From: Scyliorhinus canicula
Taxonomy: Eukaryota
Assembly (NCBI RefSeq): GCF_902713615.1
Contig: NC_052152.1
Location: 41,639,810-41,703,809 of the forward strand
Length of the DNA stretch: 64,000 nt
Direction of reading: 5' to 3'
Position 1 is the stretch's first letter, and the number at the start of each line of letters is the position of its first letter. The position numbers were made by a program, and so were the translations under genes. Below are positions 1,720 to 2,079 of this stretch, in pieces. The notes under the pieces are model-generated. The model was not told where the DNA came from and searched no databases. It saw only the letters and a program-made list of their open reading frames with translations.

Positions 1720-2079
1720 TGACAAGCAAAAACTTATCTGTCTTCCAAACGCCATCTGAGATTAGAGTGTTGAAGGGGGACATTGCCCAAATAAATTGTT
1801 CATTCAGCGATACAGATGAACAATGGAGGATTATATGGAGGAGAAACACCAGTGCAAAAGTATTATGTCACCACCTGGCAAATAAAAATAATCTTACTTC
1901 TGTCAGGCATTGCACAGAATATGCTAACATTACAGTGAACCTCTTGCGAAAATCCTCATCTTTAACCATCTACAATCTTCATTTAAATGACTCCGACATT
2001 TATTTCTGTGAAGTTCATTTTGAAATACCTCCTCCTCCAAGAAGCAAAATTGGAGAAGGTACGCTCGTCACAGTGGAAG
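1720..2079 (+). CDS. Ig V-set domain exon with germline-joined J-like G strand (VJ exon)
   Basis: tttctgcag| acceptor and G|gtgagt donor, phase 1-1, 360 nt. Protein (V)TSKNLSVFQTPSEIRVLKGDIAQINC...IIW...SLTIYNLHLNDSDIYFCEVHFEIPPPPRSKIGEGTLVTVE has B-strand Cys, C-strand Trp, DxxxYxC and a GxGTxVTV J motif with no intervening RSS or intron. Confidence 0.93.

What the first reader, a model, noticed from the sequence alone, without database searches (positions are those of the whole stretch)
1860..2079. V domain has CD28/CTLA-4-like hallmarks but is fused to a C1 domain
Seen: the F-G region is C-E-V-H-F-E-I-P-P-P-P-R-S-K-I-G-E-G-T, and there is an extra Cys pair (codons 1866 and 1911) in the C'-D region. 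Established (recalled human sequences): CTLA-4 reads [19 protein letters not shown], and CD28 reads NL..N..DIYFC...MYPPPY, both with an extra C'-region disulfide. PPP falls at +7 to +9 and IG-x-GT at +14 to +18 from the F-strand Cys in both this protein and CTLA-4. CD28-family receptors have a single V domain and no C1. Inference: the protein may bind a B7-family ligand via the polyproline loop, and may be an architectural link between costimulatory receptors and VJ-C1 antigen receptors.
Basis: partly seen in the sequence, partly recalled or inferred. Interest (0 to 1): 0.75.

Follow-up and report, generated by a model that had tools for sequence, protein, structure and literature searches.

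The report
Catshark CD28-like V-C1 inhibitory receptor
This is a real, transcribed small-spotted catshark gene for an inhibitory cell-surface receptor that joins a CD28/CTLA-4-family binding domain to an antibody-type constant domain. I found this architecture described for no CD28-family member in the papers I could search.

Summary
Window 1860-2079 is the C'-to-G part of a V exon (1720-2079). It reads C-E-V-H-F-E-I-P-P-P-P-R-S-K-I-G-E-G-T after the F-strand Cys, with extra Cys codons at 1866 and 1911.

The gene has five coding exons: leader, V, C1, TM and tail, ending at 37622. It encodes the 317-aa RefSeq protein mis-named "immunoglobulin kappa light chain-like" (Scyliorhinus canicula). Spliced contigs confirm the first two joints. 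The tail carries an ITIM (VIYSLL).

The family occurs in sharks, rays, skates, a chimaera, a lungfish and a sturgeon. It comes as inhibitory forms and activating forms (Arg in the TM), and IPPP is invariant in all of them.

The V domain belongs to the extended CD28 family. It fits the CD28H-type motif YxCExxxEIPPP better than the MYPPPY of CD28/CTLA-4. Its nearest non-family relatives are V-only CD28H, CD28HL and CD28X proteins, and its fold matches CD28, TMIGD2 and CTLA-4. Deep branching is unresolved, so the "architectural link" idea stays open.

In the elephant shark a B7-family gene lies 7.6 kb downstream, but in-silico support for binding is weak.

This scan had already met a paralogue 200 kb upstream (s1-240106).

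The parts
326..404 (+). First coding exon. It follows an AG at 324-325; the ATG is at 341. It encodes the signal peptide MIPMGTQVIKRCVLLYFFLIA and ends in phase 1 with a GT donor at 405.
   Evidence: Sequence. Identical to residues 1-21 of P0148. Spliced contigs of X30, X9 and X13 join 404 to 1720.
1720..2079 (+). V exon with the J-like G strand in the same exon, so it is non-rearranging. The F-strand Cys is at 2007-2009, EIPPPP at 2022-2039 and IGEGT at 2049-2063. The extra Cys codons are at 1866 and 1911.
   Evidence: Pfam V-set 44.2 bits and V-set_2 (ICOS V-set) 29.1 bits, cut-off 28. Model pLDDT 89.7. Joints confirmed by contigs.
4168..4473 (+). C1-set constant-domain exon, phase 1 at both ends.
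   Evidence: Pfam C1-set E 6e-19. The best PDB chain is UrIg2 V-C1-C2-C3, followed by Ig heavy-chain constant domains. The joint 2079|4168 is in three runs.
26199..26303 (+). Stalk and transmembrane exon (LASDKLLWTIPIVSGLIALMVFVVAPVICTCSIL). The TM is uncharged and there is no stalk Cys.
   Evidence: tblastn with family proteins. AG/GT sites and phase 1. Identical to P0148.
37504..37622 (+). Cytoplasmic exon with the ITIM V-I-Y-S-L-L at 37587-37604 and the stop TAG at 37620-37622.
   Evidence: tblastn and sequence. The tail motif xIYSLLGQ is conserved in the inhibitory forms of sharks and rays, with closely related variants in skates, sawfish, chimaera and lungfish.

Best explanation
The window holds one intact, transcribed gene of Scyliorhinus canicula for a type I membrane receptor: signal peptide, a VJ-type V domain, one C1 domain, an uncharged TM and a short tail with one ITIM.

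Shown: the exon structure, the splicing of the first three coding exons, and identity with RefSeq protein P0148. Also shown: conservation of the architecture and of the I-P-P-P loop in sharks, rays, skates, chimaera, lungfish and sturgeon. The family includes activating-type paralogues with an Arg in the TM.

Shown by comparison: the V domain belongs to the extended CD28 family and is closest in motif and score to the CD28H/CD28HL/CD28X branch.

Inferred: the proline-rich F-G loop at the top of the V domain is the ligand-contact site, as in CTLA-4 and CD28. The C1 domain acts as a spacer and possibly a pairing module. After ligand binding the phosphorylated ITIM recruits SHP-type phosphatases and damps activation, while the Arg-TM paralogues signal through an acidic adaptor.

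A B7-family molecule is the likeliest kind of ligand, possibly the neighbouring HHLA2-like gene. That step is only weakly supported.
For: Gene model:
- All exons are phase 1 with GT-AG sites.
- The model equals P0148 over 317 aa.
- Contigs of three runs carry the joints 404|1720 and 2079|4168. One contig of 1825 nt extends beyond the laid stretch at both ends.

Family:
- 22 proteins match at E below 1e-5, from Pristis, Mobula, Hemitrygon, Pristiophorus, Heptranchias, Leucoraja, Carcharodon, Heterodontus, Mustelus, Stegostoma, Rhincodon, Amblyraja and Callorhinchus.
- Lungfish P0104 and sturgeon P0129 also have V plus C1.
- IPPP is invariant.

CD28 kinship:
- Reading 1.84 billion representatives, the best non-family hits are V-only proteins with the same loop: CD28H-type with a YVNV tail, CD28HL1-type with a YESFDYF tail, and CD28X-type with a YEDM tail.
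- The family HMM scores them 60-75 bits, against 45 for a TCR-like V and 32 for CD7.
- The motif fits both published signatures, YxC[EKQN]xxxEIP(PP) and YxCx6PPPx4/5GxG.
- In Foldseek on Swiss-Prot, mouse CD28 ranks 2 and human TMIGD2 ranks 3 with the best TM-score (0.82, rmsd 2.4). Chicken CD28 ranks 4 and CTLA-4 entries rank 9-24.

Paired forms:
- The activating V clade (95/80) and the inhibitory V clade (89/94) each span sharks and rays.

Ligand lead:
- In the elephant shark a B7-family gene starts 7.6 kb downstream of the orthologue. Its called product matches V-set, C2-set_3 and V-set, and its first V exon best matches CD276, VTCN1, PD-L1 and BTN.
- Complex prediction gave weak support for the two V domains: score 0.36, best control 0.02. 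That mark was reached by 51 of 78 solved complexes and 2 of 108 mismatched pairs, but scores of 0.60 or less were seen in only 5 of those 78 solved complexes and in all 4 mismatches that passed. The runs agree in at least 95% of their contacts and the partner's pLDDT is at least 90.
Against: - Against PDB sequences the single V domain and the family profile hit TCR V-alpha/delta and antibody V domains first. CD28 comes at E 2e-4 and CTLA-4 at 1e-3. PDB is dominated by such chains.
- V trees leave the deep nodes open. Long-branched CTLA-4-type and CD7 rows move around.
- Several features of CD28/CTLA-4 proper are absent: MYPPPY, the stalk Cys, the TM YxxxxT motif and YxxM.
- The complex score is weak and may only reflect the memory of solved CD28-family/B7 complexes.
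- The B7 neighbour was seen by me only in the elephant shark. For the catshark I have only an unchecked scan note. No B7 exon lies within 10 kb in skate, sawfish, sevengill shark or sturgeon.
- The TM and tail joints were not covered by the reads call.
- Expression level and cell type are unknown. The one raw-read run had almost no reads.
Confidence: 0.7

Rival explanations
1. This is a generic non-rearranging VJ-C1 inhibitory receptor, one of many such families in sharks. Its proline loop arose by convergence, and the V domain has no special kinship with the CD28 family.
For: PDB sequence searches rank TCR and antibody V domains first. Deep tree nodes are unresolved. Scan notes report many other VJ-C1-TM-ITIM genes in this genome. 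RefSeq names the members light-chain-like, SIRP-like or tapasin-related-like.
Against: In the exhaustive representative search the nearest non-family proteins are all CD28-family V-only receptors. They share the whole YxCx3EIPPPx5GxG stretch, not only PPP. Pfam V-set_2 (ICOS V-set) passes its cut-off. CD28, TMIGD2 and CTLA-4 dominate the non-rearranging structural matches.
Confidence: 0.18
2. The V domain is CD28H-like, but the architecture is derived. A CD28H-type V exon, or a C1 exon, was shuffled into an existing receptor gene in an early jawed vertebrate. On this reading the gene is a mosaic, not a relic linking costimulatory receptors to antigen receptors.
For: All exons are phase 1, which allows exon insertion. 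The nine described CD28-family members all lack a C domain. The C1 evolves separately from the V: it is 92-97% identical between inhibitory and activating paralogues within a species that share only 53-61% in V, so the two exons have separable histories. The best C1 matches are UrIg2 and Ig heavy-chain constant domains.
Against: The V-C1 form is as old as the split of cartilaginous and bony fishes. That is as old as the CD28 family itself, so neither direction is favoured. No donor C1 family was found: a word-based search of the C1 alone returned only family members.
Confidence: 0.35
3. It is what RefSeq calls it: an immunoglobulin light-chain-like gene, meaning a germline-joined or degenerate antigen-receptor chain.
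For: The V-C1 model aligns over its full length with antibody light chains at about 24% identity. It has a J-like G strand and a C1 domain with the FYP...W and YxCxVxH hallmarks.
Against: It has a TM exon and an ITIM tail. V and J are in one exon with no recombination signal gap. The V is closest to CD28-family proteins. It is conserved as an orthologous single gene with inhibitory and activating twins.
Confidence: 0.02

Closest known systems
CD28H (TMIGD2) and its paralogues CD28HL1, CD28HL2 and CD28X, as defined by Quiniou et al. 2024 (PMC11599192)
   Same: The F-G loop signature YxC[E]xxxE-I-P-P-P followed by GxG. A VJ-type V domain. They are the best non-family sequence hits and give the best structural TM-score (human TMIGD2 0.82). 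They occur in both cartilaginous and basal bony fishes.
   Different: Those genes have a single V domain and tails with YxNx, Y[E/D]SF or YEDM. This one has an added C1 domain and an ITIM tail, exists as inhibitory/activating twins, and carries an extra Cys pair in C'-C''.
CTLA-4 and CD28
   Same: PPP at +7 to +9 and I-G-x-G-T at +14 to +18 from the F-strand Cys. An extra Cys on strand C'. The same V fold (TM 0.74-0.81).
   Different: No MYPPPY hexapeptide, no membrane-proximal Cys for covalent dimers, and no YxxM or YVKM tail motif. A C1 domain is present. Sequence E-values to the human proteins are only 2e-4 to 1e-3.
Paired inhibitory/activating IgSF receptors with C1 domains, such as SIRP-alpha and SIRP-beta
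   Same: A VJ-type V followed by a C1-set domain. An ITIM form and a form with a basic residue in the TM. Concerted evolution between paralogues within a species.
   Different: SIRPs have V-C1-C1 and their V is not CD28-like. Here it is the C1, not the ligand-binding V, that is homogenised between the twins.
UrIg and UrIg2, non-rearranging shark antigen-receptor-like genes (PMC12227049)
   Same: A non-rearranging single-exon VJ domain followed by C1 domains. The UrIg2 chain is the best PDB match of this C1.
   Different: UrIg2 has ten Ig domains and forms Fc-like dimers. This gene has one C1, a TM and an ITIM, and its V is CD28-like rather than Ig/TCR-like.

Membership tests
Extended CD28 family (Quiniou et al. 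2024) | [quoted passage not shown] | tested here: not met
   A C1-set exon at 4168-4473 is spliced to the V exon.
Extended CD28 family (Quiniou et al. 2024) | F-G (CDR3) loop motif YxCx6PPPx4/5GxG, or YxC[E/K/Q/N]xxxEIP | tested here: met
   Y-F-C-E-V-H-F-E-I-P-P-P-P-R-S-K-I-G-E-G.
Extended CD28 family (Quiniou et al. 2024) | V domain nearer to family members than to other V families | tested here: inconclusive
   Met by the exhaustive search, the HMM ranking and the Swiss-Prot fold search. Not met by the PDB sequence ranking. Tree deep nodes are unresolved.
Extended CD28 family (Quiniou et al. 2024) | Tyrosine-based signalling motif in a short cytoplasmic tail | tested here: met
   ITIM V-I-Y-S-L-L at 37587-37604. 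ITIMs are also described for CD28HL3 and PD-1.
Extended CD28 family (Quiniou et al. 2024) | Binds a B7-family ligand | not testable with these tools
   There are only leads: a B7-family gene next to the elephant shark orthologue and weak complex support, 0.36 against a control of 0.02.
CD28/CTLA-4 proper | MYPPPY ligand-binding hexapeptide | tested here: not met
   The loop reads F-E-I-P-P-P-P. Bona fide CTLA-4-type P0026 and PDB CTLA-4 read M-Y-P-P-P-Y.
CD28/CTLA-4 proper | Extra C'-D disulfide | tested here: inconclusive
   A Cys pair is present and nearly invariant. The first Cys aligns. The second is 15 rather than 18-20 residues later and is modelled at the end of C''.
CD28/CTLA-4 proper | Membrane-proximal Cys, TM YxxxxT dimer motif, and a YxxM tail motif | tested here: not met
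   The stalk and TM read LASDKLLWTIPIVSGLIALMVFVVAPVICTCSIL and the tail has only VIYSLL.
Rearranging antigen receptor or Ig light chain (the RefSeq name) | Separate V and J segments with recombination signals; secreted or CD3/CD79-associated chain | tested here: not met
   V and the J-like strand lie in one uninterrupted exon, 1720-2079. A TM and an ITIM are present.
Paired inhibitory/activating receptor family | Closely related ectodomains on an ITIM tail and on a TM with a basic residue | tested here: met
   ITIM forms: P0148, P0147, P0150, P0145, P0144, P0142. Arg-in-TM forms: P0151, P0153, P0149, P0007. C1 is 92-97% identical within a species.
SIRP family (the RefSeq name of some members) | V-C1-C1 ectodomain with a SIRP-type V | tested here: not met
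   There is only one C1 exon in the window. SIRP is not among the best sequence or fold matches.

The most novel reading that the evidence does not exclude
V-C1 is the ancestral architecture of the CD28 family, and today's V-only costimulatory receptors lost the C1. On this reading the gene and the neighbouring HHLA2-like B7 gene are a surviving receptor-ligand pair from a primordial costimulatory locus. It would be comparable to NKp30-B7H6 linkage, and the CD28 family would tie directly to the VJ-C1 plan of antigen receptors.
Probability: 0.15. Interest if true: 0.85.

Novelty: new variant of a known kind. Interest (0 to 1): 0.6.

Why it matters
The most recent survey of the CD28 family states that all nine members have a single V domain, and that the family's origin remains unknown. 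This gene shows a further, ancient lineage that is conserved from chimaeras and sharks to lungfish and sturgeon. In it a CD28H-type V domain sits on a C1 domain and comes in inhibitory and activating versions.

That adds a checkpoint-like receptor pair to the shark immune system. It also gives a concrete object for asking how costimulatory receptors relate to VJ-C1 receptors. Together with the adjacent B7-family gene in the elephant shark, it offers a testable receptor-ligand candidate.

It also corrects misleading database names: light-chain-like, SIRP-like and tapasin-related-like.

Tried and rejected
- V-domain trees of 83 and 65 rows did not resolve which CD28-family member is sister. Long branches (CD7, CTLA-4-type) were attracted into or next to the V-C1 rows. 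The AU test did not reject a single V-C1 clade (p 0.25), which does not prove one.
- PDB sequence and Foldseek searches of the V domain are swamped by antibodies and TCRs and do not discriminate.
- A search with the C1 region alone returned only family members, so no donor family for the C1 was found.
- Looking for B7 exons within 10 kb of the orthologues in little skate, sawfish, sevengill shark and sturgeon gave nothing. DNA of the catshark record itself could not be fetched, so the HHLA2-like neighbour reported by a scan note stays unchecked.
- The raw-read RNA run X22 had almost no reads on the exons, so strand, ends and expression level could not be read.
- The protein-atlas look-up gave only generic V-set neighbours, with a PD-1 family cluster first at 0.95. 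I treated it as a lead only.
- Literature searches for an earlier description of V-C1 CD28-like genes found none. The library lacks most subscription journals.
- I considered a pseudogene and a chimeric gene model. I rejected both because of the intact frame, the canonical splice sites, the spliced contigs and the same exon order in other species.

Full report
**What is at the coordinates**

The + strand frame starting at 1722 is open to the exon end at 2079. The exon is preceded by a pyrimidine tract and an AG (cag|TG at 1720) and followed by GTGAGT.

The F-strand Cys is at 2007-2009. E-I-P-P-P-P is at 2022-2039 and I-G-E-G-T at 2049-2063. The two extra Cys codons are at 1866 and 1911, as stated.

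Pfam gives V-set (44.2 bits) and also V-set_2, the ICOS V-set model, at 29.1 bits against a cut-off of 28.

A second exon, 4168-4473, is a C1-set domain (E 6e-19). It has the classical L-I-C...F-Y-P...V-S-W and Y-S-C-Q-V-N-H marks. A tblastn of both domains against the window found no other V or C1 exon.

**The whole gene**

Homologues found later let me place the other exons:
- a first coding exon, 326-404, with the ATG at 341;
- a stalk and TM exon, 26199-26303;
- a tail exon, 37504-37622.

All are phase 1 with GT-AG borders. The conceptual product is identical over 317 residues to P0148. NCBI predicted that protein from Scyliorhinus canicula and named it "immunoglobulin kappa light chain-like".

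Contigs from three public runs skip exactly 405-1719 and 2080-4167. One contig of 1825 nt continues for 631 nt beyond the C1 exon and 447 nt before the ATG exon. So the V and C1 exons are spliced together in RNA. The last two joints rest on the gene model and on conservation, not on reads.

The TM is uncharged. The tail ends ...D-D-T-V-I-Y-S-L-L-G-Q-V-H-P, an ITIM by the consensus (I/V/L/S)xYxx(L/V/I).

The two long introns (22 and 11 kb) are full of LINE copies and other repeats. No other host gene is evident in the window.

**The family**

An exhaustive HMMER scan of 1.84 billion representatives with the V domain and a word-indexed search with P0001 gave V-C1-TM proteins from many sharks, rays and skates and from the elephant shark. 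Two further hits with both domains come from a lungfish (P0104) and a sturgeon (P0129).

In 19 chondrichthyan V domains, and in 21 ectodomains including the two bony-fish ones, I-P-P-P is invariant. The extra Cys pair is nearly invariant; it is missing in the elephant shark.

Two kinds of members exist:
- Forms with an uncharged TM and a tail ending xIYSLLGQ or a close variant. The lungfish has AIYSMVGE.
- Forms with an Arg inside the TM and a short tail: P0151 of the catshark, P0153, P0149 and P0007.

In the V tree the activating-type rows form one clade (95/80) and the inhibitory-type rows another (89/94). Each holds sharks and batoids, so the split predates the shark-ray divergence.

Within a species the two kinds share only 53-61% identity in V but 92-97% in C1. 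Orthologous C1 domains of different species share 79-83%. The C1 exon is therefore being homogenised between the twins while the V domains are kept apart.

**Is the V domain CD28-like?**

The recalled human sequence is correct.

More telling is the comparison with the recent survey of the family (PMC11599192). It defines CD28H and CD28HL1/2 by YxC[E/K/Q/N]xxx-E-I-P, with E-I-P-P-P in chondrichthyans. It defines CD28X by the "CTLA4 signature" YxCx6PPPx4/5GxG. The catshark protein (Y-F-C-E-V-H-F-E-I-P-P-P-P-R-S-K-I-G-E-G) fits both.

After the V-C1 family itself, the best hits of the exhaustive search are V-only proteins with this loop. Their tails identify them as CD28H-type (PVYVNV), CD28HL1-type (LYESFDYF, including an alligator protein annotated TMIGD2), probable CD28HL2 (VYEN) and CD28X-type (EYEDM).

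A family HMM scores these groups as follows:

| Group | Bits |
|---|---|
| CD28H, CD28HL and CD28X types | about 60-75 |
| Shark CD28/CTLA-4 cluster | 52-58 |
| Bona fide CTLA-4-type V (P0026; E 7e-24 to human CTLA-4) | 46 |
| TCR-like V | 45 |
| CD7 | 32 |

The AlphaFold model of the V domain is confident (pLDDT 89.7). Against all reviewed UniProt models:
- mouse CD28 ranks second;
- human TMIGD2 ranks third, with the best TM-score (0.82, rmsd 2.4 A);
- chicken CD28 ranks fourth;
- CTLA-4 entries fill ranks 9-24, mixed with TCR V-alpha, CD8-beta and VH.

Several results weigh against a simple assignment:
- PDB sequence searches put TCR and antibody V domains first.
- The trees do not resolve which family member is sister.
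- Features specific to CD28/CTLA-4 are missing: MYPPPY, the stalk Cys, the TM dimer motif and YxxM.
- The extra disulfide is only analogous. The first Cys aligns with the C' Cys of CTLA-4-type domains. The second is closer in sequence, and the model puts it at the end of C'', directly across the C'-C'' hairpin.

My reading is that the V domain is a member of the extended CD28 family on the CD28H side. It is not an orthologue of CD28 or CTLA-4.

**The C1 domain and the "link" idea**

The C1 is a standard C1-set domain. Its best solved relatives are the UrIg2 chain and Ig heavy-chain constant domains. The two-domain model (pLDDT 89.4) aligns end to end with antibody light chains at about 24% identity. 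The TM-score is only about 0.4, because the interdomain angle differs. That explains the RefSeq names.

The survey states that every described CD28-family gene has a single V domain. I found no paper describing a V-C1 member, so the architecture is new for the family.

Whether it is ancestral or a mosaic cannot be decided here:
- The V-C1 form is as old as the cartilaginous/bony fish split.
- All exons are phase 1, which permits shuffling.
- V and C1 have visibly separate histories.
- No donor C1 family turned up.

**Ligand**

A first-stage note of this scan (s1-253774) reports an HHLA2-like B7 gene 20 kb beyond the window. I could not fetch that DNA.

In the elephant shark, the gene that starts 7.6 kb downstream of the orthologue P0009, on the same strand, has a product matching V-set, C2-set_3 and V-set. 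Its first V exon best matches CD276, VTCN1, MOG, PD-L1 and butyrophilins in PDB. An HHLA2 cluster is among its atlas neighbours. It is a B7-family gene with the V-C-V order of HHLA2, the known ligand of CD28H.

A complex prediction of the two elephant shark V domains gave weak support: score 0.36, best control 0.02. That mark was reached by 51 of 78 solved complexes and 2 of 108 mismatched pairs. Scores of 0.60 or less were seen in only 5 of those solved complexes and in all 4 mismatches that passed. The runs agree in at least 95% of contacts and the partner's pLDDT is at least 90. Because CD28-family/B7 complexes are solved, such a pass may reflect family likeness only.

No B7 exon lies within 10 kb in four other species. 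The B7-ligand idea is therefore a reasonable, testable lead, not a result.

**Verdict**

- Its evolutionary claim is open.
- The gene is best described as the inhibitory member of an old, unnamed pair of V-C1 receptors with a CD28-family V domain.

This scan had already reported a paralogue about 200 kb upstream (s1-240106) and, on this window, the same gene as a whole (s1-253600).

Noticed in passing
window 4168-4473, compared with paralogue P0151: The C1 domain is 97% identical to that of the activating-type catshark paralogue, while the V domains share only 55%. The same pattern holds in white shark and sawshark (C1 92-95%, V 53-61%), against 79-83% C1 identity between species. The C1 exon is homogenised within each species.
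   Followed up: partly
window 502-660: A short repeat in the first intron is covered at about 200,000-fold word depth in the contigs of all three runs, with many variants and loose ends. It is probably an abundant, transcribed SINE-like element.
   Followed up: no
window 9400-19100 and 27800-33700, minus strand: Several LINE copies fill the 22 kb C1-TM intron and the first part of the 11 kb TM-tail intron, with reverse transcriptase, endonuclease and ORF1-like reading frames. Two copies are clearly of the same family.
   Followed up: no
window 42300-47100: A G+C-rich tandem repeat of about 4.8 kb is open in several frames on both strands (PSPWAAPP-like translation). A smaller proline-rich repeat lies at 2900-3800 in the V-C1 intron.
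   Followed up: no
window 58000-59711: Another simple repeat is followed by an ORF of 407 aa (58488-59711, + strand) whose C-terminal half looks like a Harbinger/PIF-type transposase.
   Followed up: no
L001:24222-26594 (Callorhinchus milii): A B7-family gene with V, C and V domains starts 7.6 kb downstream of the elephant shark orthologue, on the same strand.
   Followed up: partly
L002:23432-23758 (Acipenser oxyrinchus): A second V exon of the family lies about 9 kb downstream of the sturgeon gene, so the sturgeon locus is also tandemly duplicated.
   Followed up: no
locus of P0151 (catshark; DNA not fetched): The activating-type paralogue spans 43 kb. Its RefSeq model runs into transposon-derived sequence after the TM. 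About 9 kb downstream, on the other strand, is an HMG-box/DUF2028 gene.
   Followed up: no
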